Shown here: in pieces, positions 2,465 to 35,289 of the stretch
Numbering within the stretch: position 1 is the first letter of the stretch
Layout of the letters: each line of letters opens with the position of its first letter
Origin: Ophelia neglecta
Taxonomy: Eukaryota
Direction of reading: 5' to 3'
Length of the DNA: 64,000 nt
NCBI GenBank assembly: GCA_965285935.1
Contig: OZ260662.1
Location: 82,088,001-82,152,000, forward strand
Notes under the pieces: model-generated
Database searches by the model: none
The model's input: the letters and a program-made list of their open reading frames with translations, nothing else
Told to the model about the DNA's origin: nothing
Translations under genes and position numbers: made by a program

Positions 2465-5400
2465 TTAAGCACACTCCTTTATCATTAATACTGTCATTAG
2501 GATCATCAACATAACACCGGTCAGTGAGACCGAGGGCAGGGCACTCCCTCGTCCGATCGTACCCCTCACCAGTTGACATTCCTCAGAGGTCGGCTCGTAA
2601 ACACACTTTAAATGCATCATCTCACTGAAAATGTATAAGTTAAACCGTTGACCTTAAGTTATAAATTGATATGTAGTTTATTCGTGAAGTTTAGAAGTTT
2701 CCAGGCATTGTGTTGTTAATATAAGTACGGTGGTATCACCTGAAGTTTAATAGTAAAGCTTAAAAGGGTCGGTTGCTTTAAAGGTACCTCACTCGTCCGC
2801 TTTTGTGTTCAGTGACCAACGTTGGATCAGTGCATATACTTACAAATTTTAGGAAATTGTAGGAAATGCTGATAATTGTTTAATTTTTAATACCTGAATT
2901 CTTTCGACAATGAATAATGGTACTGCATGGACATATCTGTCCATTCCCGCGAACAATGAACCATAATTCAATAGTGCTTATATTGAAAATATTTCTGCAT
3001 TACTAAACTTTCAATAAAATTCTATGTGGCAGATATAACACTTGTTTGTCCAGGCAAGCGCATTGGTGTGTTAACCTTATTGAACATTGGGAACACGGCT
3101 TAATATGTATCACTTTTCTATTGAATGATCAACTATGACTTTTGCTTTTGATTTGTGTTAACAAGTGTTTGGTTTTCGATTAATGAATGTCTCTTATGCC
3201 TGCCTTGTTTTTGATCCGGAATTTTTCGTTTTCCGTGAGTCAAGTAATTCTTTCAATTTAGATTTTTCCCATATTCTGATTGAGATGGGTTGCTAATTCA
3301 CATGCTGGTGTCTCGGGACAGGCAAATTTAATCTCTGTGCTACGTTGAGCACTGACTGGCTTGTATTATGTTCTAACTCACATTATGGGGAACTGTTAAC
3401 TACTTCTCATTGCAAATAATATCACGTCTTTGTTTTCAATTTTTATTTACATTTTAAGTTTTTTTTACTGTCTGATTATGGGAGATTGATGTATTGCTGT
3501 GCGTGGGCCAGTGGCTGCAGATATAAAAGTGTTAAACCGTGACATTCAGGACGGCAAGATCATTATACCTTACGTACTCCATTTTAGTCATGAGATTTAG
3601 GTTAAGCTAGCAATTTATGCTCATTTTAAAGTTTGGTTTAATATAATTTGACAAATATTTGTTCTACGTATTCCACACAAATGGACCTGCAGCAATTTAT
3701 TTCAGCCATGTACTACGGCATTCCGCAAGTAATTAGAAAAACCCTTATACATGATTTTTATCATTTGCTAGTGTGGAAAGTGGTGCCATCAAAAGCACCA
3801 TTAAATAGTCGAGAGTTAGATTTTCATCACGTATATGGTTTTGTCATGGAGGCATAAGATCGATTGGATTATTATCCATATGACTATGATCTAGTTGTCC
3901 TAGATTTAAAAAAACGTCACCTGTACCCAACTTTGGACATCAACCGAGAAAAACAAATACCGTACAAACCAAGTAGTATTTTATTCTTCGTCAACGTTCC
4001 ACTTTTATTCGTGTACACTTACGGTGGATCATCAATGCAGGAGTATCTCAAATTTTGACTAAAAGCGATGCTCTCTAGTTCTTTCAATGATCCCTTACCA
4101 CACATCTCCCTGAAAACATTCAATCGTCGCTTTTATGGAGTGTTAAGCCAAACGTATCTTATATTAGGTGAATATATCTCAAACTTCTATGACAAACTAA
4201 ATATACATACGTAGTCGCCCTTCCAATATCGTTCACAAGCCAAACCTCCATTTTATTAACATTCGGTGGCTTCAAGTTGGGAAGTTCCCGATCGTAAAAG
4301 ATACTATTATTATGTGATAAATATTACTTCATTAATATGTCATTCTACAAACCAAATTAAAACTTCGTCATAAACACCAGACAACCTGTTATTTCTTAAA
4401 CGGAGGTAACGAAACCTGCATTTTTTTTCTGTGACCTCAGTTTTCTGCATGAACTATAAATTCAAAACTTTGTTACCCTTGTTTTCGTTAAGATTATTGT
4501 TGGCCATAATTTGATCATTATAGGTTTATTATACCCACATTAAGTTATATATTTATCAATTTAAAAGTACTATTCTGGAATGCTAACTCATAAGATGAGT
4601 TACTGAATGCCGGTTGGTTATTTCCCCTGGTGCCATTAAGAGCTACACGGACGAGTCCATATATCCTCTGCGAGAACTGTGAAAGAAAGATCCAGAAAAA
4701 AAACACTTGTCCCCATATTTAATGTTCGAACATTAAGGTATCTCAATAGTACTTATACCAGACAGACCAACAAAATACAATCTGTTAACTGCTATATATA
4801 ACATTGTGATCTGCTACACATGCCTCATGGTGGACCTTCTCATAGGGGACCTCGTAGTGTATTCTCTTAAAATAACTGGGCATATTGGCCAAAAAAAGAT
4901 CGAAATTAAGCAGCTTCAAATAACAGAACAACAGGGCAATGAATAATTACTAGACTGCATCAAATTTGCGAGTAGTATCAATAATGTAAATGAGGATAAT
5001 AAATCGAACAAAATAGTACCTAACCATACGAGATACGGATGCAAAATGAGGAATACGTAATTCACGTAAATAGCATGCTATAAAAGAACTGAATCAACAG
5101 TTTTATTGGTAAATTTTTATTTAATTTGAAATTCACTCGACAGATATAGGCATATTAAAATTCGTATTATGTTACAGATGCACGAATTTTTTACGGACTA
5201 GATAGAATGTGCACAATAATTGTAACGTTTTTGTTAACCGCCCCCTTTATGGGCACTACTTTTCCAAAATAGCTATTGGTATCGGATATGGTTTGTGCCA
5301 CCGAACGGTTTCTTGTCTGTGACAAGAAGTTCTGGATTAACCTAGAGATAATGTGCATCGCAACCTCAGTAACATAGTAGGATAACCAGCAAGGTATCAA

Positions 5401-8222
5401 ATAAAAATAAAGTTTCCTTCATTTTGAATATTAATTGATGGATCACACTTGCGATTAACTTCTTGTTTTAATCGTCTTCTAAAGGTGTTTCCGCACTCTT
5501 TATAGTACCAAATATATCCTGGCTCAAAGGCGTAATGAAAAAAGTATTTTGTAGCACATTACTAGCCCAATTGAATTTATCATCCCCCCCCCCCCCCAGA
5601 AACATCATATAGGTTGTAAACATCTAAGGGTAGGTATTATAGGTTGCAATCTGGTCAGTTTTAACCACTAAGAAACAATGTCTATTAATCTGGAGGAGCC
5701 GGAATGGACACCCGGCTGACACAGCAACTTCTTTAATGCAAAATAGTCAAATAAATCGGTCCAAAGTCTTCAGGAATAAGCAGCATTATATTAAGCCCAC
5801 ATACACCAATCCCCAGCTCCCAACCAGTAAATAAACACATTAAATTGTGGAACCATCCTCAAAGCTACTTTATTGATTCTACTCATCATGATATTTGTTA
5901 GGCCTATCAGATAGACCCAATATATCCGTACAGCGTATGTAAAAAGGCTTTCCATACGGCGTATAACGAAATTATTGGGACTTAAGGTGTCTTCTTTAAT
6001 ATTGGTTTAATGGTTTATCAGGTCTCTCTACTTACTTGGTTTGACACTTCCCTCCAAAAGTTGAAAGTGGCTTCACCGGGACAGGAAGCATAGGGTGGGC
6101 AGTGTGTATTATTGATGCCTGAGGGTTCAGTACTACCACAAAATACCATGTCCTGAGCTATATGTCCTGATAGGGGATGGAAGAAAAACTGTTTGTGCAT
6201 TGTTATTACTGGCATATTGAGAAGAGTTTTATTCTGGATAGAATTCTCCAGAATGACCCTCGATAGAAAAACTAAAGAAATCGATAAATCCCGATTGCCA
6301 TATCGATCAGGTTAATGAAACTAAGCCATGGATGATAGCAATGTTTACAAATGGGAAGAATAATCGAAGAACCACAAATTACTCTCCTGTATACAGACTG
6401 AACTTTTTTTGCTCAATCGATGAGACATAACATTTTTTTTTCATTTCAAAAGTAAGAACCTATCGTGCCTTGCCTTTCGAGTAATATCACAATTATGTCA
6501 CATTTTGAGAAAAAATAGTCCCCAATATACTCCCATAGGGCATGAATAATCTTTGCCCTACAATGAACGCTGACTCGTTAGTTAAGTTCTATATTTTACA
6601 TTAACTGTGACTTCTACCTACTCTACTGTCATGTGTAGGAAGCAATTCAGTAAGTCTAGCATTGAACACAAAGCACATAGGCATGTAAGGTACAATGCAC
6701 CAGTTTAAACATGTAAGTGATTTTTAATACCATTAATTTACGTAGAACTACAACGGTATGTATTTACCACCAAAATTTATAATACTTAAGCTGACATTTA
6801 TTGCAGCACCTTATATATGTTAAATGTTATTTTATTTAGTTACTACACCTGGTAAATAGTCTGCCAAAGCGGTAGCGCGCACCCCATGGTCCGAATAGCG
6901 ATAAACAATTGGATACATTTCCGACCACAGCAACCCCTGCAACAGAAATTGGACCCTATCTATGTTCATTCATGCTCTGAAAAACCTACTGACCAACGTG
7001 GTCCGTGGGCCAGACAGGCTCACCTTGCATACACCCCTCCCCCCCTCCCTAACCCTGGTACTCAGCCCACGCTTTCTCCCTCTCTCCCCCGGTAATCAGC
7101 GCATGCTGCTTCCAGCCCCCACCCCATAATTGGTAATCAGCGCATCATAATTATATTCATTTAATAATACATTTAAACCCAGTTGGGTGTTATTTTGTCC
7201 ACTCGCTCCAGAAAAATGAAAATTTTGAACTCATGCCATGAGACTGAAAAGCCGGGGAATACTCCAAAAGGACGTAAACAATTTTGTTTGTCCCTCCTTT
7301 GTCCCCTCCCCTCCCCCCCCCCCCCAAACTCCACCGTCGTCCGAAATGAAACTGTTGTTCAACACAGCTTCTTATCTAATTGTCCAGTTTTGTTTTAAGT
7401 AGCAACTTAAAATTAAGAAAATAAAGTAACAAACATAACAGTTTGAACAAAATGTACTAATTTAGATTTCATATGAAAGTATATTAGGGGAGGTAACTAT
7501 ATATGCCATGGTTTTCGGTGCCCTATTCAAACCTACCGAGTTGTTTGGAAAAGAATGGCCTGCCTCCGCTGCAAACTCCCTGAAATCTTCCTCCGAAACA
7601 TCACAAGGAACTTTATGCATAAAAGCTCCAGTGAACAATATCCACAAAGTGCTACAGTTTTTTTGTCTGTAACATAAATCCAGTCAGATTAAAGTAATTC
7701 TATATGAACTAAGCAGCACAAAGACAGACTGTAAATTATATCGTCGTAGCAAAACTTTTCAATTATATCAAATTATAACATTGAATGAATGAATAAATGA
7801 ATGAATAAATTAATCAAAGACCTATTAAATAATCATGACCATGCATACCGACAAATAAATAGTCAACCCATTAGACATCAGGATTTAAATAATCCGACTG
7901 TCTGCCGTAAATCAAGCACCATTGCATGTTTTATTTCTAGTATCTGTGATCAAACGCAATTTATAGCAAAGTTTGTTTATTCGGTTTTCGAATATCTGTT
8001 TATCATTGACATACATTCAGGCAAGGCAAGGCATGAATCAATACTTACTCACCCGTCAATAAACAAATCAGGCCGAATCAAAGTTTGAAATTCCCAACAA
8101 CGCCCGATAAATATATCCTTCAGTTGAGCGAAATTTGTGGGGTTTAGTTCCGCACCATCACAGCCGGCAGGCATTATGGTAAATGCGCTGACTGCAATCA
8201 GCAAAGCGAACAAAACAGACAT
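2465..8222 (-). CDS. CD38-like: ADP-ribosyl cyclase/NAD+ glycohydrolase (CD38/CD157/Aplysia ARC family), paralog 1; 8 coding exons, ~315 aa, predicted GPI-anchored
   Basis: Exons 8222-8053, 7666-7537, 6936-6849, 6166-6036, 4676-4588, 4303-4211, 4109-4023 and 2624-2465 join in frame (948 nt). Family motifs: signal peptide MSVLFALLIAVSAF, IFIGRC, NCSTLWILF..AF..K.PC...EEDF, LLWS, ALADYLPG (TLEDTL equivalent), VFCG, FWREVS, VALNGT, IFYDRELPNL (catalytic Glu), CGKGSLKELE, YSCIDDP, HLKCV...EEC, and a hydrophobic C-terminal tail. The exon-5 donor is shifted relative to paralog 2 (see findings). Confidence 0.92.
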
Positions 8223-9822
8223 TTTTGCAGGCTTTTTCTCAGTATTCTGAAAGGGTAATTCTAGAGAAACTTTACGAGATAGCACACAAGCCTTTAAGAG
8301 AGAAAGAGAGAGACACAAGAGAGTTGCGCCGGTACATATAAGTATGTATCAGAGGGTATCAAGGAGTCATTTACATAATAAATTAATACATTTACTTTCA
8401 AGAACGGCGTGCGTTTCAAAGTCACACACGGCAAACATCATATTTTTTAACATGTTCACTTGACTTATGCAAAGCTTTATGGGTCCGTTCAGAAGTGCTC
8501 TCGATACTACTTTACATCCTCTTGAAAATGCGGCTACATGTATGCAGTTAAGTAGCTATAATTTATGAATAGTCCAAAGCCGATAACAGCTAGGCATATA
8601 AGACTATCTATATTAAATTAAGCAGGTGTAATGATTCACCTTGCACGTTAAACCTTATGATTAGAGTGTCTGAGACATTACCCCTTCTTCTATTAGAAAA
8701 ATGGAGTCAATTTGGCCCTGGATTATTCGGACACTGGCATTACTTTCCACTTCAGCTGCGGCTATAACGCTATATACTCAGCTGTAATCCCGAGACACAT
8801 GGAAATGATCCCGAACGATGTTTTAATTATTGAATCCCGTGATAATGTAGAATTACCGGATCTAGCTATAGGCTGCAGTGTAGCATAAAGCTCCACCAAA
8901 CTTAAACCAAGTTTATCCAAACGTAAACTGGAAAATATTTATATAAATTTTTAGATTTTATGAGTTTAATTTTTTTTTCTTTATGACAAATCAAGTAATT
9001 CATTAAAATTTCACCGTGCCCCCGTCTTTGCCATGGGTTACGGCGTGATCGATCATATATAACCCTCTTCTTTTCCCGAAATTACATTAATTACTAAAAT
9101 AATTACTTAAAATTACTAAAGATATTACTAAATATTCTTCATGGCATTGTAAAGAAGTAAAGAATGACTTATATTTGAATTCAAATCACAGACGCACTCA
9201 CGCAAACAAGGGCTAGACAAGATGATCCCCTCTTTCGGCGAAACGTGGGATACGGATTACTAATAATTAGTATGTAATTATAGGAAAATACTTGGTGAAA
9301 TAAAAGTAATAAATGAATCTAATACTTATAATATATATATGTCATTTTAAAAAATTGGTGCAAAGAGATTACGCATGTCTTAACACACGAGACATTCGAA
9401 AATGCGTTGATGAAGCTGGCTTTTAAACAATGCCGAAGTCATCTTAGTTGGGCGTCACATCTGTACTATTTTTCAAACCTTCTTTCAAAGGTTTTAGTAA
9501 AATTTCAGTCAGATGCTTTAATTCCTATTTCTTGTAGGCCTATCTTATTAAGCATAAATGACAGGAATTGATAAGTTGCCAACAGTTATGAAAGAAAATT
9601 AAATAATAATTTAGGAGTAGTTTAGCGGTTTTGAAGTAGTTTTACTTTCACTTAGTCATTTTCAGCGTATTAAAACATAGCGTGAATTTACGATTACAGT
9701 TTTAATAAGCTACTTCTTGCGAAATATCTGCGGCACAGAGATGCGGATTGTTATAAAAGAACGGAAATTTCATGACGAATAAAGTGTTGTTATTTTTCTT
9801 CAATTGATTTTTTGTTTTATTT

Positions 9823-12170: not shown

Positions 12171-12292
12171 AACACAAGCGCTTATTTCATTTTTGAGCAG
12201 GGTTTACAGCGACTTAGCCTCGGGTATATTAACACAACAGAACTTATCAAAACAGCACCATCCAATATGGCTATGATTTGAATGTGTTTAAA

Positions 12293-15200
12293 TTAAGCAC
12301 GCTCCTTTATCATTATTACTGCCATTAAATTCATCAACATAACACCGGTCAGTGAGACCGAAGGCAGGGCACTCCCTCGTCCGATCGTATCCCTCACCAG
12401 CTGACATTCCTCCGAGTCCGCATTGGACACACACTTTAAATGCATCATCTCACTGAAAATGCATGAATTTATCCGTTATAAGTTAAAATATTTCATTTTG
12501 AAGTATAGAACTTTACTGCTCATATAGCCCACATTAACCAGAGACAAATTTGGAGGTCTTCTGTCTACTTTACCCCAGAAACCAATTTCGAAGACAGATA
12601 TTGGCAATAAGCATCCAATTTGGACACTGTTTTGACATGTTCACAAATTTCTTCCCTACTGACTGTTATGATGGAAAGCTAAAGGTTAGATGTAAATGTC
12701 AAAAACTAATTTTCTGTTATATTTATGTATGGTTTGGGTTATATGACTTTACTTCAATTTGTATGAATGACAAATGTTTTTACCGACCTATTGTCTCTTG
12801 AAAAACTTGTAAAAAGTATGCAAATTGGCCCACATTGAAGTGTAGATCCCACGAAAGTTTTGAACGAATAAATGCAAACAATCCTAACTTTCTCTTATGG
12901 CTATTTCTTACCGCAATTGAATTGCATCGGAATGTGCACAGTTTCAAATCTTGGCCCATAAAGCCCAAATCTTGACCATCGGGCTATATACTTTAACAGT
13001 CGGCTAATATACATTATCATTGCTTAATAATTTAGTCCTCGATTAAATAAACTATATAATATAATAATAATTAATATATAATAGTAGTTCGAAATGAGTA
13101 GAAGCATGGAACCAGTTAGAACCCCTAGAATGGCCTAGATTGCCGTCGTTCTCTTAAATGCATAAATATTAAAATTTCAGCTTCATTGTATGTAAAAATA
13201 CCCGACAATTACGTAAGAATTAACATATAGGGAGATACAATCAGAAAAACATTTCAGGTAGCATTTCGCATTAATAAGCTACTAGCTTGCGATAATTCAT
13301 TTATAGTTTTGCCATTTCAAAAAGCACCGTCGAAAGGCTAAAGGTTTGTTCTTCTTATGTCATCATTTAAACTACTATGTAGGTGATCCATAGGACTATA
13401 AGCTAGTTGAAGTATACATGTATTTAAATTCATGTTATTGCAAAGGTCCCTCTATTTATATCCAGAACAAATCAAGCAAGGATTTGTCAACTTTAAAACA
13501 CTTTAACTGAGAAAAAAACACCATAAAATTGGATCGACTTTCGTGGTTAATCTAGTTTCATTTTATTCTTACACTTACTTTGGATTGACCTCGCAGGAGT
13601 AATCCAAGTCTTGTTCACGAGCCATGCCCTCTAATTCTTTCAATGATCCCTCACCACAAATCTCCCTGTAAATATTCAATCATCGCTTTTATGGAATTTT
13701 TAGCCGAACTTATCGTTTTATTTGAACCGCATGCCATTTCAGTGCAAAACATATAATGTGTCCACTTGTGTAATATATATATATATATTGTCTGAAGGCT
13801 GGTGAATGTTTATGAAGATTTACAAGTAATCATAGCCCGAATATATAGATGATTTAAATCCCAAACTGATGAACTGAAACACACGTGTGCCATGTACTGA
13901 TTACTGTACATTCACTTATAAACATTAGAAAATAAAGTTAATTATAGCCCATTCTATACTAAGAACTGTTATATAAATTGGCTTACTATAAGATAAATTT
14001 ATACTTACGGGTTCTCCTTTCCAACATCGTTCACAAGCCAAACCTCCATTTTATTAACATTCGGTGGTTTCAAGTTTGGAAGTTCCCGATCGTAAAAGAT
14101 ACTACAGTAAGTTAGAGTAGATAACTTTATTAATATTTTATGTTACAAATCAACTTCATATAATGTACAGACAAGAAGTTATATCTTACATTGAGGTAAC
14201 GAAACCTGCGATTTTTTTTTCACCTCGGTTCTCTGTATGGGCGCATTATATAAAGATTATTCATGTTCAGGTTGTTGGTAAAGAAGATTGTTGGCAATAT
14301 TGTATTTGTTATAAATGTACATAACCACAACGAGTTTTCGATCAATTTGAAAGTGCTGTTCTGGAAAAGTAAATTCATACGATTGGTGACTGAAGGCCGG
14401 AATGTCATTTCCCCTGGTGCCATTTAGAGCTACACGGACGAGTCCCCGAATCTTCTGTGAGAACTGTAAATATAAGATGTACATAATGCATGTTGTTTAT
14501 CGTAATGTCATTCAGTTTAGTAGGATTCTGGTTAGCAAGGCACCAAATAAAAACCTTTTCGTCCTCTTTGGATTGTAGTGCGTTGGGCGTTATGATATTA
14601 AATATTTGTGTGAGGATCTTGGTCCGCTGAACAATAATTATGACACCTTCAACGCCTCCATAAAAATTGGATAAATCTCTAAGCTTTGGAGATCTGCTAA
14701 TCTGTGCCTTGTGCAAAAAGTTATACGACCTTAACAGATCTTGCCAGACTGCGGCCAATGTCCTTTACTCCAGTTTTGTGCAGGGATTTGCAATACTTTG
14801 ACCGCAAGTGAGTAGCTATGGGGATTGGGAATAATCATGACCTCTATCAACTGTCAGAAATGCGAACATAGTGAAACAGGAAGATGTTAAAGACAGACTT
14901 TTACACAGGTGAGAAGATAGATAACTGGGAACACATAATAGTGAGTAATATTTGTATACCACAATTCTTGACAATTCTTGATTACCTTGATTTCTGAGAG
15001 TGTACATTACAGGGAATATAGCTGGATCAAGGAGGTAATTACATGAACACAATGAATTTAACAAGCAAGAGCACGCCCAGTTTTCCCCTTTTTCTCATCA
15101 AATGGGATGCTTTATAGGAAGCTAATAACTCACAGTTTTGATGTTCATCTCACTAATACCTAATCTTAGTTCACCGACGAATATATATATAATACTACTA

Positions 15201-17721
15201 CAAAAAGTCTCCAATCAATCGAAAACCACGCAGTAATTGTCATACACTATCATTGGTATGTCTCGTCTTGTTTTTAGGGACAGTTTTAATTTTTTAGACC
15301 AATGGCCGAGAAAAGGACACATGCCCAAAATAACAGTGCAAGGCAGTCACACCTACAAATAAACAGTTCGTATATCATTGAAGGGTATCCAGGCCGGCAG
15401 AGTGTTCAGGTTTTTCTTTTTTATAGCGAAAAGTATTTCCTTGATATCGATATCGTTGTCAAGCTAGGCACGAAGGGCACCATCCTTAGTGCTACTAAAT
15501 ATTCCTTTTAATTAGGGCATTTTGAGCAGATAGACATATATCGGTGCAGCGTATATCAATGTACTTTCATTAGGCGTAAAAGCACATTATTTGGACCTAC
15601 TCGTCTACTTAAATACTAGTTTCTTTGTTAATTAGGTCTTTATACTTCATTAGGTAAAGATGAACTTTACATTTATTAGTTTAATATGGTCTTTTCATTT
15701 TATGATTTATTAGGTCTTTATAATTTGATTGTCCATATACTGATAACTATAGGCAAAATCTATGTTCATATCTCACAATTAAAAACCTACTTTCTGTACT
15801 TGCCTGGTTAGATACTTCCCTCCAATAGTTGAAATTCGTTTCGCCAGGACAGGAAGCATACGCTGGGCATGTTGTATCACTGATGCCTGATGGTTCAGTA
15901 GTACTACCACAAAAAACCATGTTCCCAACAATATAGCCTGAAAGACAGATGAGAGAAAACCACTCTGTAATCACATCTTAACAACACCCGAAATACTGCC
16001 CTAACCACTCCTCCAATGTTTAATATCCTAATTTTGCGTTCAACCACCACGGTATTCACAAACTACAATATAGTATAAATTTGAATTCCCCATTTGTTTC
16101 AGATAGATTTATATCAATTTTGGTTATTTCTTGTTTATCTAGTAATTATACCTGGTAAATAGTCACCCAAGGCAGTAGCGCGCAACCCATTGTCCGAATA
16201 GCGATAAACAAATGGAAACAGTCCCGACCACAACAACCCCTGCAACAAAATATACCGAGATTAGCATTCGAATTCAATTTTAAATACACGGGGTTCCCTG
16301 CGCCACACGTGTGACGGTTACGGGGTACCAAAAGTTGCTCAAGCTTCAGTACCTTCGACGTACATGTATCAATAGCACTCTCATATTTAACGACCAGATG
16401 ACCATTAATTTTGATAGACATTGTTTTTAGCGTACGAAGTAAAAATTAAAATATTAATATAATAAGCACAACAGTTTGAATAAAAGTATGAATTATCTTT
16501 CTTTTAAAATTCATACAAAGTTATATTGTGCTAGAGTGCTAGACATATAATATGTCAATCAGTTTTCGGTGTTCTATTCATACCTACCGAGTCCTTTGGA
16601 AAAGAATGGCCTGCCTCCTTTGCGAATTCCCTGAAATCTTCCTCCGAACTATTACAAGGACCTTTATGCATGAAAGCATCAGTGAATAATATCCACAAAG
16701 CGCTACAGTTTTTTTGTCTGTAACATAAATCCAATCAGATTAAAGTATTTCTACAATAACTAAGCGTTTATGGCACGCAAGGCCAAAAAAAGTCAGACTG
16801 TATCTTATATATTATCATAGCGAAAGTATTAGATTATATTGAAAAAAGCACCATGGTTGAATTGTGTTTGTTCTATGCTCATTAATACATGCAGGTAGAA
16901 CGATAAAAGTATTACACTGGCAATGCCCGAACGCCAATAACCCACGAAGCCGCTCGTATTTATATTTATTTATACGCCATAATGTCGTAATTAAACTTTA
17001 CACCTTCCGCAACGAAAGTCTAATAGTAAGCATCTAACTGTAAGACATTTAAAGAGGCGTCGGTGAGTGGGGGGGGGGGGGGGGTGAATCCTTATGAATT
17101 AACTGTTTGTCTGGTTAACCAACGAATTTTAATTTGATGTTGAGGCATCCTGGCCTGCTATGGGATAAATCACTTACAGAAAAATCAACATTTTGGGAAA
17201 GTACTATATAAAATTGTTTATCAGGAATCGACCCTAAAGTGTTCTAAAAGTGTTATATTATGTTATATAGGCCTATCAAAAATTTAAAATTCGAAATAGA
17301 ATGGTCTTATGTACAATTGCACACGTGGTCAGACAGCTAAGTTCAGTAAATTAATAGTATTTGTGAACAACATGGGCAATAAGGCAGCATATAGAACGTT
17401 CGGGAATTAAATAATCGAGACAATACTGAATAAATAAATATTCAACTCAATAAACAATAAACAAGTTGGAAATCACTTGATTTAAATTAATAAAAAATAC
17501 TTGTAATGCATCTATTACTGGTGACAAAACAACGCAGTAATACTAACTCACCCGTCCATAAACAAATCAGGCCGAATCAAAGTTTGAAATTCCCAACAAC
17601 GCCCGATAAATACGTCTTCCAGTTGCGCGAAATCTGTGGCTTTTTGATCCTCACCATCACAGCCGACAGGCATAATGGTAAAAACGCTGACAGCCATTAG
17701 CAGAGCAATCAGAGAAATCAT
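12293..17721 (-). CDS. CD38-like: ADP-ribosyl cyclase family, paralog 2; 8 coding exons, ~314 aa, predicted GPI-anchored
   Basis: Exons 17721-17552, 16717-16588, 16239-16152, 15937-15804 (GC donor CAG|GCAAGT), 14463-14381, 14101-14009, 13665-13579 and 12452-12293 join in frame (945 nt). Same motifs as paralog 1, with ALGDYLPG, NYWREVS and IFYDRELPNL. Intron flanks and 3' region are also visibly homologous to paralog 1. Confidence 0.93.
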
Positions 17722-19621: not shown

Positions 19622-20192
19622 TGTAGCGGGGGCTATCACTGCCATCTATAACAACACTCTTTGACAGTAATAGATCTTTATTTCGGCGTTCACAGTCTCA
19701 TTAATCACGTACAATCCGTAAGCCACTAAAAATACGTACGATGCTTAAACGACGATCGTTGACCACGTAAAACTGAAAACAAACAAACCTCCATTACAAC
19801 TAGGCCACAGACATAAATTATGTTAATTATGCTGGACGAACACGTGCGTAGGTTTGACATTCTAATTACTGATTTTTATACATCAATAAGACAATAAAAT
19901 TGACGAAACTTATTTGTTTACTATCTATGCATGTTTACCTTCATTCCAGGGTTCACATTTAACAATTTTCAGCGGAATCATTCCTTTAGGAGCATAAAAC
20001 AGGATAGGTAAGTAGCCTAAGACTTGGCTGATCGAAAACCGGAAACAACTGAATCTAGATCTACCGGAAGCAAACACCACAACTAGGAAATACAGAAGCA
20101 CACACAGAGACGCCTAGGGAACTAGGCGTGCATTACCATAATAACCACAGGACTAATGGGGCAGTAGTATACGACCACTAGACGCACTTACA
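19622..20192 (-). repeat. 3' LTR of BEL/Pao element (571 bp)
   Basis: Direct repeat of 26548-27118, preceded on the minus strand by the PPT. Confidence 0.97.
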
Positions 20193-20202
20193 TGGCTCCT
20201 CT
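20193..20202 (-). other. Polypurine tract of the retrotransposon
   Basis: Minus-strand AGAGGAGCCA directly abutting the TG of the 3' LTR. Confidence 0.8.
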
Positions 20203-20394
20203 AAATTTTACCAAATTTACTAACTAAATAACAAATGGTCTCACCACTATACTATCGACAATTTTACAAACATTAATAATAACTTGCACAATAATAATAA
20301 TTTCGAGAAAGGAGAGGTTCCAGCACATCACTTTCAACACCAGTCTTTACCACTGGTTCCCTACATACAAAACAATGATACTTTCATAATACAT

Positions 20395-26571: not shown

Positions 26572-27118
26572 CTATAACAACACTCTTTGACAGTAATAGA
26601 TCTTTATTTCGGCGTTCACAGTCTCATTAATCACGTACAATCCGTAAGCCACTAAAAATACGTACGATGCTTAAACGACGATCGTTGACCACGTAAAACT
26701 GAAAACAAACAAACCTCCATTACAACTAGGCCACAGACATAAATTATGTTAATTATGCTGGACGAACACGTGCGTAGGTTTGACATTCTAATTACTGATT
26801 TTTATACATCAATAAGACAATAAAATTGACGAAACTTATTTGTTTACTATCTATGCATGTTTACCTTCATTCCAGGGTTCACATTTAACAATTTTCAGCG
26901 GAATCATTCCTTTAGGAGCATAAAACAGGATAGGTAAGTAGCCTAAGACTTGGCTGATCGAAAACCGGAAACAACTGAATCTAGATCTACCGGAAGCAAA
27001 CACCACAACTAGGAAATACAGAAGCACACACAGAGACGCCTAGGGAACTAGGCGTGCATTACCATAATAACCACAGGACTAATGGGGCAGTAGTATACGA
27101 CCACTAGACGCACTTACA
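26548..27118 (-). repeat. 5' LTR of BEL/Pao element (571 bp)
   Basis: Direct repeat of 19622-20192. On the minus strand it starts TGTAAG and ends GCTACA. AATAAA at 26608-26603. Confidence 0.97.
26699..26864 (-). other. Putative 166-nt GT-AG intron within the LTR (copy in 3' LTR at 19773-19938)
   Basis: Donor AAG|GTAAAC at 26864, branch-like ATTAAC about 50 nt upstream of the acceptor, acceptor GTTTGTTTGTTTTCAG| ending at 26699, AT-rich interior. Confidence 0.55.
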
Positions 27119-28273
27119 TTCGGAAACGCCGTTGTTCGTGGCAGAGAAACTGTCGGTCTGTACTTGTCTGGCTGATTGCTTGCTTAAAATAAAATTTTAT
27201 CTGACTGAAACACATGACTGATATTTTGATAAGCTAGATAATTTCGCCAGCTCGGATCTGTTGATACAGGTTGAATCCCGGAATAGTTAAAACCAAAAAG
27301 AACTCGAGCTCATTGAATACTAATCGCCGGGAAAACTGTCTGGCTGCCGCGAGACAGGTGCACGACGCAACAATTAAGGTTTACAAGTAAATCCTCGCAA
27401 GGCGCATCGACAAGGGGACAACCATCTCGGTAGGGTGTTGCGACCGCCAGATAAGGTTTTGTCTCATTTGGGAAAAAGCCTGGAAACAAACCAAATAGAG
27501 TGAAGTCGGTAGGTGTGTTGCCATTTGTTAAAAACAACTAAATTTGTTATCCAAACACATTACATTCTGACTTAAAGAGGTTTCGGTGTCCTATTCGGCA
27601 CGTTTAACAAATGAATCTGCTTCCGTGTGAAATAATCCGGCCAAGCACCTGTTGAAGTGAATTTCTCTATATATGAGAATAATCCGTGACGTTTGGCAAT
27701 ATTAACTAACTGAGGTAGATACCCTCTGCGCGTGCCGCAGCCCCATATTACAGTCATTATTTGTAGACAAAACAGTCGCAAACTAAGATTATATAGTGGC
27801 GAACGTACAATTAGTTTTCAAATATGCCATGATGCCGTATACAATGTTGAAGGCAGTTAGGGTGTCCAATTGACAGGCATAAGCTACTGCACCTCTCGAG
27901 TTGCAAACACGATCGCCTCAGTCAGTCCGATGGAATACAGAAGATAATCACCACCTTTCTGATATGCATTTTGAATATCTATGGGGAATTGAATATTATT
28001 TGCATGTAGGTGAACGATCCATCGGTTCAGAACAATCTTTCGAACAACTTATATTAGATTACATGCAACTTGATCAGGAATAATAGTGTTACCGAATAGG
28101 TAAGAAATTCTCAGGAACCACCAGCAGGCTCACAACCACAAAATGAAGCAGAACGATAGGACTAATGTATAAAAATTATAATTGTCAATATGAAATAGTT
28201 ATGGAGACATTAAACCTAACTTTGCATTATAATCTATGTAAATGTATGATCACCATGTGTGCGAAAAATCTGC

Positions 28274-28690: not shown

Positions 28691-30002
28691 CCTGGTAACA
28701 AAAGAAGCTGTGACTAAGGTTTAAGGTCTGCAGTGAATGAACTAGGGTCGGTCGGGTCATCTGAAACAATGGTTTAAGGCCTATGGTGTGGCAACGCGAG
28801 AGTTGCTCTTCACACAGAGCATCAACCTATACTGTAGCCTATAGGTTCTAGCTTCAAAACAAATATGAATGACGAACACTTTCCCTTCTTCCCACTCCTG
28901 CTCCCAGGCCCACTACCACATTCCCTCCCACTCATCCCCCATCCCTCTCACTCCTGCCCCTCTCTCCCACTTCCGCCCCATCACTAACACTTTTGCCCAA
29001 CTTCCTTCATCTCACCTTGCTCAGATGCTGGAATATGTGGTAAGGCAAAGCAGCCAATTTAGTTGTAGACGTATTGAAAGTAGAATACCATTCGAAGATG
29101 GCACATGTATATCGGGTGAGATTATTTGATATGTGGCATTACCTTTATTAACCTAAATATAATTCAATAAAATAATACCATATTCCGTATCCAACATAAA
29201 GTTCTCCATAAATGTGTTAACATTTACATATGGGCCCACGTAAGGCATCTCCGTCGATAACCGGCATCTACTTAGCAAAGCAGTATTCAAACATAAGTAT
29301 TCCTCTTATTGAAATTGACAGCCAGCTGGGTCCTTAAGATATCTACAAGACTATGTGTATAATACATCAGCTTAACATGACAGATTGCCAAGGTTTCTGT
29401 TTTGGAGTTAACAATTATTTCCGTATCTGTACGTATGCTCGTGCGACATTAGGTAAATTAGTTAACATGATATCCTTGCTGATCACGTCTGTGTTATTTA
29501 CTGGCTGACAAAACATGACTATATTATGGGACGAAGGCTAATAAAGGCTTAACTGTGGTTGGAGACGAATTAACGTGAGCATCTGAGTGAATAATTTGAT
29601 TGATAAACACTTTGATAGAAACCGTCTTGACTGTCAGTAGTACATAAGAAACGTTCTCTGTTCAAACAAGGCGGATACATATAAACAATTGATAAGAAAC
29701 TCTTTTTTTATTGCAACTTAAGATATTTTCACAGCATAGATTATTTTCAATTGCACTAACACCTAAGTTATATTAATACCTTCGATTAACCTCGGTTTCT
29801 TGTCTTGCATTGTTGTTAACTTTCATTATGCCTGAACGAAACATCATATAATAACATAATAGCAATCAATTGAATTAAAAAAAATCCCCAATTTGAAAAA
29901 AGACGTTTGGCACTTGGGCATGTATATTATATAATTGTGACGAACAGTTTCCCTAGTCGATATGAAGTGCTAGGAACCACATCTGGAAAGACTGCTTTGT
30001 AG

Positions 30003-33000
30003 TTAATAGTTCAATAGGAATGTCATCAAGTTGATCAACAGGACACAAACTGACGAAATATTAGGTAGAGCACTGCCTTCATTCACCCCTGGCTGACATT
30101 CTGCGGCGGTAGGATTTGAAACACAGAGCAAATGAAGTGTCTCGCTGAAAAACAAAACAGATAAGTTTGAATAGGTAGATAAGCACACTTAAATTGTGAT
30201 GTATATGATGGTAGGTAAAATATGCATTGGAAAGGGTTATGAACATGCACACTATCATTGATTAGTCTCCGAAGTATTCACTTTGAAATTCTTTTAAATC
30301 GATTTTATTCTTAGCTAAGGTCACCGCTATACGGGACATGAGCTAACTCCGTCATTTGAAACAAACCGAGGATCTTTACAAATATATAAGGACGCTCAAC
30401 CCTAGGACAGGACTTTGTTTTAGTTGAATTTTGTACTAGGATAATTCTCCATTTCAAGCCCTCAAGATACAGATTATTACTGCCGTCTTGAGTTATTTCG
30501 TCTTGTATGTCTGCATTACATTTTCCCAGTACTAAAATAATGTTATAAAGGCTGGTGTCAAGTGAATAATATATCTTTCTTTAGAGACATGAATTTAATT
30601 AACATTTTAACAATATAATCATTGCGAGCCCACGCATTAACTTTGCTGTTTTATTTTTAATATTGTTTTTTTTGGCACTTGCTACGCAAAAACATTGCTT
30701 TATTTGACCAATTGCACTGGGGCATATAAGTTGTACCTTTCGCTTCCATTGCGTGGGATCCTCTACATCTTAAAAATTTTAATCTGATTTATGCCTATTG
30801 TGAAAATACGTTTTGGTTTATGCTATATGTTAAATGTCATGTTGCTATGTAACCATGTTCTCCAGGACAATGACCATTATTAATATAAATATGATCCAGG
30901 GTTTTTCCGTCAAAAAATACCAAGCTGCAGTTTGACAAAACCTCGTACATAATTCGAATTGAGGGTCAAATACCACAACTAATTCACCTTCTAATTTTTT
31001 ATTTGATGAATGAAACAAAGTTAATGGAACACACTCAAAAAGTATAACTTACGGTGGATCATCAATACACGAATAGGTAATTCCCTGGGATAACGCTATG
31101 GCTTCAAGAATCTTCAGAGATCCCTGGCCACAAATCTCCCTGTAAACAGTATACCTTGTCAATTTAAATGGTTCGTAGCCATTGAATACTTATTATGAAC
31201 ACGGTTAGGTATATATTACCTTTTATACAAGAATAAAATTCCACTGAGATTACCTTTTCTTAATGGATTTCCCTATCGCACAATTGCATGTGCAATAAGT
31301 AAATTAAATTGGCAAAAAATTAAAGTTGTATGGAGCAGTATCGACAAACCGTACATCGCAAAATTGCATCAAAAGCATTTTTATAAATTCAACAAAACTA
31401 TAAGTTACAAACACGTTATATTAGATATGTAACGTGCTCCATAGAGAATAAAGGCTTATTTTCATGGCTTCACGCCATCAATTTCCTTAGCACTCTATTA
31501 GATTTCCCTTTTCAGTCTTTCCGACCGATAGATAGTTGCTGACCCTGCATTGCTCTGTTGTGGGTTTGCCCTTATGCTATGTACTTAAAACGTGAATTTC
31601 AGAATAATTAGGATTTTATTTGTGAGTAAATAGGTCTTTCATTCTCATGAAAACAAGAGTGTCATATACTTAAATAACTTAGATATTACAAGTGCCAGAG
31701 AGTTTATTAATTTTGGCAAAGCCAGGCACAAATGATAGGGAGCCCGGGTCTTTGACCTGTATCAAGGTACCGAAAAATGAGAGAAAGAATAATAAAAAAC
31801 CAACAATCGTTATTGAACAACAATAACGGCAACTTAGCATATAATTAAACGATATAACAAGCACAATGGTCTTCATTCGAGTAACTTATGTTCTAACAAC
31901 GTTTAAACCTATACATTAACAAAATAGCTTTTTATTGCTTATATGTACGCACGTCTTTGGCTTTCCAACATCGTGAACCAGCCAGATCTCTAGATGTGTC
32001 ACTCTTGGAGCAACAAGGTTTACCAGCTCCTGGTCGGCAAATATACTGAAACAAGGTTTATAAGTTTTTTGTTAACAAATATACTGAAACAAGGTTTACA
32101 AGTTCCTTGTCAGAAAATATACTGCGCGACGATTTACATGGAAGCTGCTTCCTGCTTCTGGATTGGGCTATACTTGGGTCAGTCAGCCAGGTCAACTAAT
32201 CAATGACGCTGTTACAAACATATAGTTTGCTTCAGCAAGACACGTGCAAAATACATTTATAGCAAAGCAAAGTTAGCATGATCAACAAGTGTATTATTTA
32301 TACAAATGTTTTAATAAAAAGAAAAAAGAGATGAACGAGCCAAGGCTTACATGACTCACGGAATTATAGCAATGCACCGTGTGGCGCAAGGTTATGAAAT
32401 TTCACGAGACATTTAATTTATCACAAGGATAAATTCGCCAGTTGCACAGGGCGCTTTCGTTTCCCAATCACTGTACGGGGAAATTTTGTTCCCAAATAAT
32501 AAATCGATTTTGAATCACATTTCATAAAACTTCTTAGTGTCCAAGCTTGTCCAATCTAATGTTTTCTTAAAGACACCAATATCTAAGTTTGATTAAAGTT
32601 CAGTCTCTTACGTTTTGTTCTGGAAAGCAGGCTTATCTACAAGTGAACCGTTCAGTGCCGCTCTGACGAACCCTTGTATCTTGGCCGAGAACTAGCAGAA
32701 GGCAAAATAAATGGCTCTTAATACATGCTTAATACAAAACTCATAGCATGAGATCGTCTTTGACGTTTGTGCATGGTCGTGTCGGAGAAGAATATTATCG
32801 AGCAGGGCAAATGGCATCATTGAATTAAATATATATCTAAATGTTGACCAATCCACTTACTATCATATTAACTGTAAACAAATATTAATTAATGTAACGA
32901 CCTTGGATGGTTATGAATGTAGCTCTAATAGTGTGGGGGATATTAACAAATAAATTAAATTATATAATTATACTTGCTTGGAAAGACAGTTCCTTCCAAA

Positions 33001-35289
33001 AATTATAAGTGACTTCACCCGGACATGACATGTAGGGTGGACAGTAAATGTAATCAATCCCGGGGGGATGCTGACTACCACAGTATCTTATACCCTGGGC
33101 AATGTGACCTTCAATGAAGCCAATCTAATAGAGTTGGGTGTAACTATCAGGATGAGATACATGTTAAAAGATACGTTAACCAGTAAGAATTAACACACTA
33201 ACATTATTTTATGTGCATTTTTTTTCTGTGCATTGATTATATGATGCAAACTAGCTGGAATTTAATGGTTTGATATTTTGTTTAAACAAAAGATCTCAAG
33301 GTTATTAATAATGTTATACTACACTTTGAAAAACGGGAGTGGATACTCGACGGGCAAAGCAAAATTATTAATAAGGAGAAATCCAGTTGTCCATGAATAC
33401 CAGGAACCACCAGCCACAGACCCGTAAGAGGTGACAGGTGAACATTAATGTTGATGTACCTGCTAAATAGTCGGCTAAAGCCGTAGCTCGTGTTCCATGG
33501 TCCGAATATTTGTATGTGAAAGGATAAAGTTCTTCCCATAAAATAGCCTGAAATATAGAATTAATCGCCAGATATGAGGATCGAGACTGGGTGTATGATG
33601 TATCATCTTATGGACATCTATCATACATGCTTTGTTTTCCATGCATTCTTATGAATTTTGGTTATTTACCCCTACGGTGTTTAATAAATGGTTGATTATT
33701 TCGCGATGGCTAGACTCTACATTGAACGTGTACATGTACAATATCTATATGGTAAATAGTCAAAAACAACGGACAAGTTTCTAACCTATAGCGTATGGAA
33801 TGTATTTGAACAATGGAAATATACATAAAACGCAACACATCTATCCACTAGGGTTCATAACTTATATTAAGTTATATTAAGTTGATATAGAAAAAAACCT
33901 TATTATCATTTAATGCAAATATTATTCAGGCCGATATGATTTAATGCATTATATAAATACAGATCAAATTGATAAATTTACTTCTACACTTACTTTCACA
34001 AAACAAAAATATACCTGTCAGAGTCATAAAACAAAATACCAACTCAATACAAAAATTAATACATCACCTATCATGGCCATGAACAAACTTACCAGAGCAA
34101 AGTGATTTTAACATTTTTAATATTAATATTTTAAAACAATGTCACTATTAGTGCGAATATTTCAGAAATAAACCATTTGTTTAATTCCAAACAACTGTAT
34201 CTAATAAAGTTTGTGTTTTATAGTAAAATGTACTCACCGTATTAGGTGGAATGGGATGTGCTGCTTCTGTTACATACTCTCTGAAGTCTTCCTCCGTCAT
34301 ATTACATGGATCTTTATACATAAAGGAATTTGAGAACACTGTCCAAAGCTTGTTACAGTCTTTTCGTCTGAATCATAAGCAAATGTATGCATATATAAAT
34401 GAATTTCGTTCGATTCAAAACTTGATTAAGAAGTGACTTGCTCATCAAGGTATAATTTACACAAAATGTGCGATTCAATAAAATAGAAGAACAATGTCAT
34501 ACAACAAACACGATTTCAAAATGGCTACACGAGTGAAAACGGGAGAGATACATGTACAGATACATGTACCTGGCAGAAAATTTAAAAATATAGTCATTAA
34601 TTAGGAAATAACCATTAAGTAATTCATCGGGAACCGACAGCTACATAACCTCAAACATCAATACTAAGTTCACTCTATATACAAAAGAAATTGCAACGGA
34701 ATTGATAATTAAAACAATACTTGCAATGAAAAGTGCTGTAGTCAGCACTGTTTAATGATGCGAGTAAAATCAGAACAGTTAGCGGTAAATGTAGATCAGC
34801 GATGAAAAGTGCCTTTGGAACGGATAAGGGGTTATGCTCTCTCATAAAAGAATGTCACAATACATGGATCGATTAACCCGAAGAACATACGAATTAACAC
34901 GGATGGGTGTAAAGAGTCTTTGCAATCTCAAATGGTTTAGATCTATTAGCTATAAAATGGTTTAGATCTTATTTCGTTAAGGCATCCGCAATACGGTGTA
35001 TATTCAAAACCTGGTAGAGAGAACAACAAGCACTACCCTCCTCATATACCCTTATCTGCTAAGCAACAAGCGGGAATAAACGACACCAGGCAATATGAGC
35101 AGGGCAAATAAGCACTCACCCGTTAGTAAATAATTCTGGTCTGGTCAACGTTTGAAATTCCCAACACCGCCCGACAAAAATATCCTTCAGATTAGGGGTA
35201 GTCCCTCCATAGACGCCAGGCACCATGAGTGAGGCTACAGCCAGTAATACAACGGATACTAAAGTTAGCAAAGGGGCCGGAGTAGACAT
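30003..35289 (-). CDS. CD38-like: ADP-ribosyl cyclase family, paralog 3 (more divergent); 8 coding exons, ~306 aa, predicted GPI-anchored
   Basis: Exons 35289-35120, 34367-34238, 33547-33460, 33108-32978 (GC donor CAA|GCAAGT), 32691-32612, 32045-31953, 31139-31053 and 30144-30003 join in frame (921 nt). Motifs: GTTPNLKDIFVGRC, DCNKLW, KDPCNMTEEDF, ILWEE, ALADYLAG, FWKELS, AALNGS, IFADQELVNL, CGQGSL, YSCIDDP, hydrophobic tail. Confidence 0.93.
32012..32124 (-). repeat. 38-bp tandem triplication of the exon-6 acceptor and catalytic-Glu segment of ARC paralog 3
   Basis: Three units, each starting CAG|TATATTT, at 32121, 32083 and 32045. They translate as IFSDKELVNLVS, IFVNKKLINLVS and IFADQELVNLVA. 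Confidence 0.88.

What the first reader, a model, noticed from the sequence alone, without database searches (positions are those of the whole stretch)
2465..35289. Three ADP-ribosyl cyclases with a naturally re-engineered active site (TLEDTL changed to ALADYL/ALGDYL)
Seen: all three paralogs keep the equivalents of CD38 W125, W189, S193, catalytic E226 and the ten core cysteines. The signature Glu (CD38 E146/Aplysia E98) is Ala (6864-6862), Gly (16167-16165) and Ala (33475-33473). The D155 position is Gln/Gly/Gln, the T221 position is Ile in all three, and the CD38 C119-C201 pair is absent. Established: in CD38, E146 substitutions (including Ala and Gly) shift activity from hydrolysis towards cyclisation. 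A hydrophobic residue at 221 (Aplysia F174) favours cADPR formation. E146 and D155 impose the acid-pH requirement for NAADP base exchange. Inference: these GPI-type ectoenzymes may be dedicated cyclases or neutral-pH NAADP/base-exchange enzymes, or may use a different pyridine nucleotide. Retention of the change in the divergent paralog 3 argues against simple decay.
Basis: partly seen in the sequence, partly recalled or inferred. Interest (0 to 1): 0.75.

Follow-up and report, generated by a model that had tools for sequence, protein, structure and literature searches.

The report
Five tandem glutamate-less ADP-ribosyl cyclase genes
The window holds three of five neighbouring, apparently intact invertebrate genes for membrane-anchored NAD-cleaving enzymes of the CD38 family that lack a well-known active-site glutamate, but the same loss is common in this family, human BST-1 included, so it is a modest variant and no re-engineered novelty.

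Summary
Three 8-exon genes on the minus strand (315, 314 and 306 aa) belong to Pfam PF02267. They keep the catalytic Glu, both active-site Trp, the Ser and ten core Cys.

The picture is wider and less unusual than the title says.
- The cluster has five such genes. Two more lie 20-38 kb upstream, both with ALADYL. A sixth, canonical gene (TLENTL) sits on another chromosome.
- Human BST-1 has Ser at this position.
- In a sample biased towards relatives of this cluster, 16 of 40 database family members lack the Glu. They come from annelids, brachiopods, a nemertean, bivalves and a cnidarian.
- Ile at the T221 position also occurs in bovine CD38, a NAD glycohydrolase, so it predicts little.

dN/dS of 0.14-0.50 and the strongest conservation in the two active-site exons point to working proteins. 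What they produce cannot be read from sequence. CD38 E146A suggests a cyclase bias. BST-1 suggests nicotinamide-riboside hydrolysis and base exchange at neutral pH. No RNA data exist. Gene 1 has lost its ancestral intron-5 donor. I never joined the spliced models, so nothing was folded. I file this as a new member of a known kind, of moderate interest.

The parts
2465..8222 (-). Gene p1, 8 exons, 315 aa: 8222-8053, 7666-7537, 6936-6849, 6166-6036, 4676-4588, 4303-4211, 4109-4023, 2624-2465
   Evidence: Frames, phases and splice dinucleotides. Exons tile full-length homologs without gap or overlap. Pfam PF02267 hits are colinear exon by exon.
12293..17721 (-). Gene p2, 8 exons, 314 aa: 17721-17552, 16717-16588, 16239-16152, 15937-15804 (GC donor), 14463-14381, 14101-14009, 13665-13579, 12452-12293
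   Evidence: 76.9% amino-acid identity to p1, dN/dS 0.49.
30003..35289 (-). Gene p3, 8 exons, 306 aa: 35289-35120, 34367-34238, 33547-33460, 33108-32978 (GC donor), 32691-32612, 32045-31953, 31139-31053, 30144-30003
   Evidence: 50-58% identity to the other four genes. Computable dN/dS is 0.14-0.21; dS is saturated against p2 and u2.
6862..6864 (-). p1 Ala at the signature-Glu position (ALADYL)
   Evidence: bridged to Aplysia E98.
16165..16167 (-). p2 Gly at the signature-Glu position (ALGDYL)
33473..33475 (-). p3 Ala at the signature-Glu position (ALADYL)
6153..6155 (-). p1 Gln in the CD38 D155 column (p2 Gly 15926-15924; p3 Gln 33097-33095)
   Evidence: Exon-4 profile aligned to human CD38 YLADD; column table. 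Codon places were worked out by hand.
6901..6903 (-). p1 Tyr in the column of the His that hydrogen-bonds the signature Glu in bovine CD38 (His126). It is Tyr in all five cluster genes.
   Evidence: column H133; PMC3329556 passage. Among database relatives the column is His in 16 of 24 Glu-bearing rows against 2 of 16 Glu-less rows.
4285..4287 (-). p1 catalytic Glu in the ELPNL motif (p2 14085-14083; p3 32029-32027). Ile of the T221 column is at 4302-4300, 14100-14098 and 32044-32042.
   Evidence: Exon-6 profile aligned to BST-1 FADYE and bovine CD38 IFGRVE; invariant.
6054..6056 (-). p1 second active-site Trp (W189 column), with Ser of the S193 column at 6044-6042. The first Trp (W125 column) is at 6927-6925.
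4586..4593 (-). p1 intron-5 donor. The ancestral G of TC|GTATGA is T at 4593. The only in-frame GT is at 4587-4586, which adds two residues just before the Ile of the T221 column.
   Evidence: DNA contigs of both haplotypes carry the T (records 3 and 11). No RNA was available to show which donor is used.

Best explanation
The window carries three members of a five-gene tandem cluster, specific to this lineage, of ADP-ribosyl cyclase/CD38-family (PF02267) genes.

Each gene encodes a secreted protein of about 310 residues. It has a signal peptide, five disulfides and a short C-terminal hydrophobic tail of the kind that is swapped for a GPI anchor, so the enzyme would sit on the outer cell surface.

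Shown: the machinery that breaks the nicotinamide-ribose bond is intact. This is the Glu of the ELPNL motif, the two stacking Trp and the Ser.

Also shown: the sub-pocket that holds the leaving nicotinamide in CD38, and later the adenine and the attacking water, has been rebuilt without charge.
- The signature Glu is Ala or Gly.
- The second carboxylate (D155) is Gln or Gly.
- The His that hydrogen-bonds the Glu is Tyr.
- The Thr after the Asp is Tyr.

Inferred: the proteins are still enzymes but have a shifted substrate or product spectrum, with less water attack relative to other acceptors and no repulsion of nicotinate. They would then behave either like CD38 E146A (more cyclisation) or like BST-1, the vertebrate GPI-anchored member that has Ser here (nicotinamide-riboside hydrolysis and neutral-pH base exchange). 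Sequence alone cannot choose between these two.
For: Family and anatomy:
- PF02267 matches over the 25-bit cut-off exon by exon (41.2, 31.1 and 29 bits; 28.0 and 27.5 bits).
- Eight exons with closed frames that tile full-length homologs.

Cluster size:
- The exon-3 profile finds 5 strong matches in the whole genome, all on C2 (7 matches at E<=1, the other 2 at E 0.47 and 0.93).
- The exon-6 profile finds 6: these five plus C7.

Active site.

Selection:
- dN/dS is 0.14-0.50 in the 7 of 10 gene pairs where dS is computable.
- Exons 3 and 6, which carry the active-site residues, have the most invariant columns (13 of 29 and 14 of 30, against 105 of 328 overall).
- 14 of 16 Glu-less database relatives keep the catalytic Glu; the other 2 have gaps there.

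Anchor: an N-terminal hydrophobic stretch, and a terminal hydrophobic stretch of 14 residues preceded by small residues, in all five.

Roles of the lost residues: in bovine CD38, Glu138 and Asp147 bind the nicotinamide amide and then adenine N6, and Glu138 holds the nucleophilic water (PMC3329556 passages). The same contacts are reported for human E146 and D155 (PMC11600175 passages).

Precedents: E146A raises cADPR synthesis (PMC7734206 passage). BST-1 has Ser at the site and has nucleoside-specific activities (PMC8604996 passages).
Against: - There is no expression or splicing evidence. No RNA run holds the locus, and the reads laid were DNA contigs of one sample with no splice joints.
- p1 depends on a weak cryptic donor (GTTAGC), and the p1-p2 pair has the highest dN/dS (0.49).
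- Exon 3 is the only core exon without any Pfam match at E<=1, so the pocket has moved far from the family consensus and could have lost nucleotide binding.
- p2 has Gly at both former carboxylate positions, leaving no side chain to hold a pyridine amide.
- The GPI anchor rests on hydropathy alone.
- No structure was predicted, so an acidic side chain reaching into the site from elsewhere in the fold is not excluded.
Confidence: 0.6

Rival explanations
1. They are near-pure ADP-ribosyl cyclases, or neutral-pH NAADP synthases, acting on NAD and NADP. Loss of the Glu removes the water-activating group, and Ile at 221 shields the intermediate.
For: E146A and T221F raise cADPR synthesis in CD38 (PMC7734206 passage). 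In bovine CD38, Glu138 positions the nucleophilic water (PMC3329556 passage). Both carboxylates are absent.
Against: - Aplysia cyclase and the C7 paralog keep the Glu; Aplysia is recalled to be an almost pure cyclase, so the Glu does not decide the product.
- Bovine CD38 has the same Ile and is a glycohydrolase.
- BST-1, with Ser here, showed no apparent cyclase activity and made no NAADP in the 2021 study.
- The pH claim was not found in the held papers.
Confidence: 0.2
2. They are BST-1-like enzymes of pyridine nucleosides. They would hydrolyse nicotinamide riboside or related small pyridinium ribosides at the cell surface and exchange the base at neutral pH, serving NAD-precursor salvage rather than calcium signalling.
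For: They share the architecture of BST-1: signal peptide plus GPI-type tail and loss of the signature Glu. BST-1's activities are reported in PMC8604996 (passages). The exon-6 profile scores best against BST-1 among solved structures (31.7 bits, against 25.4 for bovine CD38 and 15.1 for human CD38).
Against: - They are not orthologs of BST-1. Ser is not Ala or Gly, and BST-1 keeps an Asp in the D155 column (VADF in the alignment) where these genes have Gln or Gly.
- Which BST-1 residues cause its nucleoside preference is not stated in the passages I saw.
- A best score on one 30-residue exon is weak evidence.
Confidence: 0.2
3. They are catalytically dead or nearly dead surface proteins, kept for binding or receptor roles as CD157 and CD38 also have. 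One or more, p1 first, may be on the way to becoming a pseudogene.
For: Both nicotinamide-holding carboxylates are gone. Exon 3 has no Pfam match. p1 has lost its intron-5 donor. The p1-p2 dN/dS is 0.49. No RNA evidence exists.
Against: The catalytic Glu, both Trp and the Ser are invariant in all five genes across saturated dS, and the active-site exons are the most conserved. A mere binding protein would have little reason to keep exactly these residues. All frames are open.
Confidence: 0.15

Closest known systems
Human BST-1 / CD157 (PDB 1isf)
   Same: A PF02267 fold with the catalytic Glu in F-x-x-x-E-[IL]-P-N-L and the signature Glu naturally replaced, as PLSDVL with Ser98. Reported as GPI-anchored (PMC1949048 passage); the cluster genes have a matching terminal hydrophobic tail.
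   Different: It has Ser, not Ala or Gly, and it keeps an Asp in the D155 column (VADF) where these genes have Gln or Gly. It is a vertebrate paralog of CD38, not an ortholog. The best identities of p1-p3 to any database protein are 42-46%, to annelid and unnamed invertebrate sequences.
Human CD38 E146A and E146G mutants
   Same: The same residue change at the same position, with the catalytic Glu and both Trp kept. E146A raises cADPR synthesis (PMC7734206 passage).
   Different: These are laboratory single mutants on a type II membrane protein with D155, H133 and T148 intact and a sixth disulfide. Here four pocket residues differ together and the C119-C201 pair is absent.
Aplysia ADP-ribosyl cyclase (PDB 1lbe) and the genome's own C7 paralog
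   Same: Ten Cys, the same fold, and the same 8-exon plan for the cluster genes (the abstract of PMC6368836 in the listing says Aplysia kurodai cyclase and CD38 genes have eight exons).
   Different: Aplysia has TLEDTL with E98 and Phe174. C7 has TLENTL with Phe, fused exons 3 and 4, and no hydrophobic tail. The cluster genes have ALADYL or ALGDYL, Ile, and a tail.
Sea urchin SpARC4 (P0088, NP_001243005.1)
   Same: An invertebrate family member with a non-canonical active site. It is recalled to be GPI-anchored, and a single natural residue is recalled to set its product preference (abstract of Ramakrishnan et al. 2010, not seen here).
   Different: Its odd residue, Tyr142, sits in the W125 column, and it keeps the signature Glu as NIELTM.
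Uncharacterised Glu-less relatives in databases (Owenia ALGDIL, Paralvinella TIADTL, Lingula ASADIL and TITDSL, Lineus HLALTL, Helobdella TIRDQL and TIRDLL, Mactra SVSDTL, Mizuhopecten AIDDTL)
   Same: The signature Glu is lost while the catalytic Glu and both Trp are kept (names). Hydrophobic C-terminal tails are seen in the four full-length rows.
   Different: None has ALADYL, and none combines Tyr in both the H133 and T148 columns except the unnamed P0082 (TVRDYL, with Arg at the Glu site). Identity to p1-p3 is at most 46%. None is known to have been assayed.

Membership tests
ADP-ribosyl cyclase / CD38 family (Pfam PF02267 Rib_hydrolayse) | Match to the Pfam model over its gathering score (25 bits) | tested here: met
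   Single exons already pass: p3 exon 2 41.2 bits, p1 exon 4 31.1, p2 exon 2 29; p1 exon 2 28.0 and exon 4 27.5. The hits of exons 1, 2, 4, 6 and 7 are colinear along the model (positions 3-24, 26-66, 99-140, 166-193, 197-223).
ADP-ribosyl cyclase / CD38 family | Catalytic Glu (CD38 E226, Aplysia E179, BST-1 E178) | tested here: met
   It is invariant in all six genes of this genome and aligns to BST-1 FADYE and bovine CD38 IFGRVE.
ADP-ribosyl cyclase / CD38 family | Two active-site Trp (CD38 W125, W189) | tested here: met
   Column table; exon-4 alignment to CD38.
ADP-ribosyl cyclase / CD38 family | Ten Cys forming the five core disulfides | tested here: met
   Counts per exon are 1+2+3+2+2, apart from extras in the signal-peptide region or the tail. 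The positions align with homologs. Disulfide pairing itself was not tested.
ADP-ribosyl cyclase / CD38 family | TLEDTL signature with its Glu (CD38 E146) | tested here: not met
   Ala, Gly, Ala, Ala, Ala in the five genes. This is a signature, not a requirement. BST-1, an accepted member with solved structures, has Ser, and 16 of 40 sampled members lack the Glu. I therefore still file the genes in the family.
ADP-ribosyl cyclase / CD38 family | Eight-exon gene plan | tested here: met
   for p1-p3 and for u1 and u2. The comparison statement comes from the abstract of PMC6368836 as listed.
ADP-ribosyl cyclase / CD38 family | NAD(P) glycohydrolase, cyclase or base-exchange activity | not testable with these tools
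   This needs recombinant protein and HPLC or LC-MS assays.
GPI-anchored subtype (CD157, SmNACE, SpARC2 type) | Cleavable signal peptide plus C-terminal GPI attachment signal | tested here: inconclusive
   Hydrophobic N-termini (12-residue means 2.5-3.0) and terminal 14-residue hydrophobic stretches (means 2.1-2.5) preceded by G/S/A-rich spacers in all five genes. No GPI or signal-peptide predictor was at hand.

The most novel reading that the evidence does not exclude
The five genes belong to an old subfamily of ARC ectoenzymes, mostly from lophotrochozoan animals, that lost the Glu. Its members have swapped the charged Glu-His-Asp pocket for an uncharged, Tyr-lined one and no longer work on NAD. 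They would instead act on pyridine nucleosides, or exchange the base at neutral pH, at the cell surface. This would make BST-1's recently found chemistry a convergent and widespread invertebrate activity, here expanded to five copies.
Probability: 0.2. Interest if true: 0.6.

Novelty: new member of a known kind. Interest (0 to 1): 0.35.

Why it matters
If the proteins are active, the cluster offers natural enzymes carrying the CD38 E146A/G change together with the loss of D155. These could be compared directly with a canonical paralog from the same genome to learn what sets the cyclase, hydrolase and base-exchange balance and the substrate choice in this family.

The wider tally shows that the 'signature' Glu is dispensable in many invertebrate members, none of which is known to have been assayed. 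That is a useful correction for annotation and for reasoning from CD38 mutagenesis.

It does not open a long-standing question by itself.

Tried and rejected
- The exon-3 profile alone found no ARC among solved structures (the only hit was a chance one at E 0.74). I bridged the position through the C7 paralog instead.
- The search for homologous proteins, given an alignment of full-length relatives with p1 and p3 exons as separate rows, returned only 3 proteins and no close ortholog.
- The representative search gave no protein more than 46% identical to p1-p3 over the matched exons. The species' own proteins therefore seem absent from the libraries, and I could not borrow a full-length model for folding.
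- No structure was predicted. The tools return no coordinates, and the spliced models were not joined, so the test for another acidic residue filling the site stays open.
- No RNA run was found. Read laying gave only DNA contigs of one sample. It supported the p1 donor base in both haplotypes but says nothing on splicing. 53 difference rows were not shown, so I cannot say that the motif codons are free of variants.
- I had recalled that SpARC4's Tyr142 lies in the TLEDTL motif. That was wrong: it is in the W125 column.
- The SpARC4 paper could not be reached.
- The acid-pH role of E146 and D155 was not found.
- No paper holds ALADYL in an ARC (the one ALGDYL hit is a lotus seed proteome).
Supplementary files were not opened.
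- The tree is poorly resolved (5 of 37 inner branches starred) and does not include the window's genes, because that would need joined exons. Their place near the Glu-less group rests only on summed exon-wise tblastn scores.
- The tally used 43 of 106 hits. The 62 hits shorter than 225 aa or of 401-528 aa, and the 884-aa repeat protein P0001, were dropped. 3 of the 43 had a gap in the column. The sample is enriched for relatives of this cluster, so 16 of 40 is not a family-wide frequency.
- The His/Glu association (Fisher p = 0.001) is not corrected for shared ancestry.

Full report
WHAT IS THERE. The window is G000:C2:82088001-82152000 of a 762-Mb animal genome with about 37% G+C. On the minus strand lie three genes of eight exons each. 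All have GT-AG introns, except a GC donor at intron 4 of genes 2 and 3, and all have closed reading frames of 315, 314 and 306 codons. The exon ends were set by hand from the printed frames. The exon peptides tile full-length database homologs end to end, without gap or overlap. Their Pfam PF02267 matches are colinear along the model, and three single exons exceed the 25-bit family cut-off on their own. For that reason no fold and no tree includes these genes.

The exon-3 profile alone does not reach any solved structure. I therefore used a sixth, canonical family gene on contig C7. Its single 70-residue exon aligns without gaps to Aplysia cyclase residues 75-143 (76.5 bits), with its TLENTL Glu on E98. 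In a MAFFT alignment of 43 database proteins with the exons added as fragments, the cluster's exon 3 falls in the same columns, Trp on Trp and Ala/Gly on Glu.

The remaining positions check out as follows.
- The exon-4 profile aligns to human CD38 YLADD...WCG...FWKTVS. This puts Gln, Gly and Gln in the D155 column and keeps the second Trp and the Ser.
- The exon-6 profile aligns to BST-1 FADYEIPNL and bovine CD38 IFGRVEAPNL. This keeps the catalytic Glu and puts Ile five residues before it, in the T221 column.
- Cys counts per exon give the ten core Cys. There is none in exons 3 and 5 or at the end of exon 2, so the sixth CD38 disulfide is absent.
- CD38 residue numbers are recalled. Aplysia and BST-1 numbers follow the PDB chains shown.

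IT IS A CLUSTER OF FIVE, PLUS ONE CANONICAL GENE. tblastn with the exon peptides found two more complete genes 20-38 kb upstream of the window: u1 in L002 and u2 in L003. Both have ALADYL and the same exon plan and splice phases. Whole-genome searches agree:
- The exon-3 profile gives five strong matches, all on C2, plus two chance-level ones.
- The exon-6 profile gives these five plus C7.
- Pfam gives eight exon matches, six on C2 and two on C7.

The C7 gene looks like the Aplysia enzyme. It has TLENTL, Phe in the F174/T221 column, fused exons 3 and 4, and an ending without a hydrophobic tail. All five cluster genes have a hydrophobic N-terminus and a hydrophobic stretch at the very C-terminus after a spacer rich in small residues. 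That is the GPI-type layout, but it was judged by hydropathy only.

THEY ARE UNDER SELECTION. Nei-Gojobori counts summed exon by exon give dN/dS of 0.14-0.50 for the seven pairs with computable dS. dS against p3 is near or beyond saturation, and the youngest pair, p1-p2, has 0.49. Exons 3 and 6, which carry the pocket and the catalytic Glu, have the most invariant columns: 13 of 29 and 14 of 30, against 105 of 328 overall.

One caveat concerns p1. In p2, u1 and u2 exon 5 ends TC|GTATGA. In p1 that G is T (window 4593). The only in-frame GT lies six bases downstream (GTTAGC) and would add two residues next to the Ile. DNA contigs of both haplotypes carry the T.

No RNA run holds the locus, and the laid records were genomic contigs of one sample. 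Expression and splicing are therefore unproven for all the genes.

THE GLU LOSS IS NOT RARE. A profile of exon 2 was searched against 1.84 billion representatives and gave 106 proteins at E<=0.001. Of these, 43 are 225-400 aa long and 40 have a residue in the signature column. 24 of the 40 have Glu and 16 have something else: Ala 4, Arg 3, Asp 3, and one each of Leu, Thr, Gly, Gln, Val and Ser.

Named examples come from annelids (Paralvinella TIADTL, Owenia ALGDIL, Helobdella TIRDQL and TIRDLL), a brachiopod (Lingula TITDSL), a nemertean (Lineus HLALTL), bivalves (Mizuhopecten AIDDTL, Mactra SVSDTL) and a cnidarian (Nematostella TLDDTL). A 198-aa Lingula protein with ASADIL falls outside the tally. 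14 of the 16 keep the catalytic Glu, and the other two have gaps there.

The sample is enriched for relatives of this cluster, so the fraction is not a family-wide frequency. A quick tree of the 40 needs at least seven changes of the Glu/non-Glu label, though well-supported branches force only two. It shows a weakly supported group (SH-aLRT 87) of 12 rows, 11 of them without Glu. The window's genes score best against members of that group and Owenia, at 42-46% identity. This is well below their 50-77% identity to each other, so the five copies arose within this lineage from an ancestor that already lacked the Glu.

Most important, human BST-1/CD157, a solved and accepted family member, reads PLSDVL with Ser98 in this column. 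ALADYL itself was found nowhere else: not in the 106 proteins and not in the held papers.

WHAT THE POCKET CHANGE MEANS. In bovine CD38 the signature Glu (Glu138) hydrogen-bonds the first Trp and His126. Together with Asp147 it holds the nicotinamide amide in the Michaelis complex. After nicotinamide leaves, it holds adenine N6 and the water placed to attack C1' (PMC3329556 passages). The same contacts of E146 and D155 are seen in a human CD38 complex (PMC11600175 passages).

In all five cluster genes four of these pocket positions differ together.
- Glu is Ala or Gly.
- The D155 column is Gln or Gly.
- The His column is Tyr.
- The Thr after the Asp is Tyr.

Among database relatives, His accompanies Glu in 16 of 24 rows but is found in only 2 of 16 Glu-less rows. 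That count is uncorrected for ancestry, but it fits a Glu-His pair being lost together.

The inference is an uncharged pocket that activates water less and does not repel nicotinate. Two precedents pull in different directions.
- CD38 E146A and T221F raise cADPR synthesis (review passage, PMC7734206).
- BST-1 was reported to have no apparent cyclase activity and no NADP-to-NAADP exchange. Instead it showed a hydrolase activity specific to nicotinamide riboside and an NR/NAR base exchange, assayed at pH 7.4 (PMC8604996 passages).

Ile in the T221 column cannot decide between them. Bovine CD38, a glycohydrolase, has it (Ile213), and so do 6 of 24 Glu-bearing and 8 of 16 Glu-less relatives.

VERDICT. 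I file the genes as new members of a known kind, of moderate interest, mainly as a ready-made natural mutant series next to a canonical paralog.

Noticed in passing
window 19485-27183: A BEL/Pao-type LTR retrotransposon lies between genes p2 and p3. It has one open frame of 2058 aa on the minus strand (20395-26571) with Pao peptidase A17 (167.5 bits), DUF5641 and DUF1759. It is flanked by 100% identical direct repeats (at least 19622-19921 and 26548-26847, spacing 6926), so the insertion looks recent. It also explains the G+C rise at 20-27 kb.
   Followed up: partly
window 4586-4593 (minus strand): Gene p1 has lost the intron-5 donor that p2, u1 and u2 share (the G is T at 4593). Only a weak GT six bases downstream keeps the frame. 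DNA contigs of both haplotypes agree with the T.
   Followed up: partly
window 15803-15802 and 32977-32976; L002 and L003 intron 4: The intron-4 donor is GC (GCAAGT or GCATGT) in four of the five cluster genes and GT only in p1. This is a conserved GC-AG intron.
   Followed up: no
L001 (G000:C7:82527001-82537000), minus strand about 3480-7550: This is the canonical family gene of the genome. It has TLENTL, Phe in the Aplysia F174 column, and exons 3 and 4 fused into one. Its last exon ends without a hydrophobic tail, so the product is probably soluble like the Aplysia enzyme.
   Followed up: partly
P0088 (S. purpuratus ADP-ribosyl cyclase isoform 4): Its Tyr142 falls in the column of the first active-site Trp (CD38 W125), and it keeps the signature Glu (NIELTM). 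My recollection that Tyr142 lies in the TLEDTL motif was wrong.
   Followed up: yes
window 2400-8300: The public DNA contigs of the one sample that holds this stretch show a second haplotype with many single-base differences and small indels. A few lie in coding exons of p1 (2534, 4212, 4220).
   Followed up: no
window 8162-8160, 17661-17659; L002 exon 1: p1, p2 and u1 carry an extra Cys in a G/D-C-D-G motif right after the hydrophobic signal stretch. p3 and u2 do not. If it lies in the mature protein it would be an unpaired eleventh Cys.
   Followed up: no
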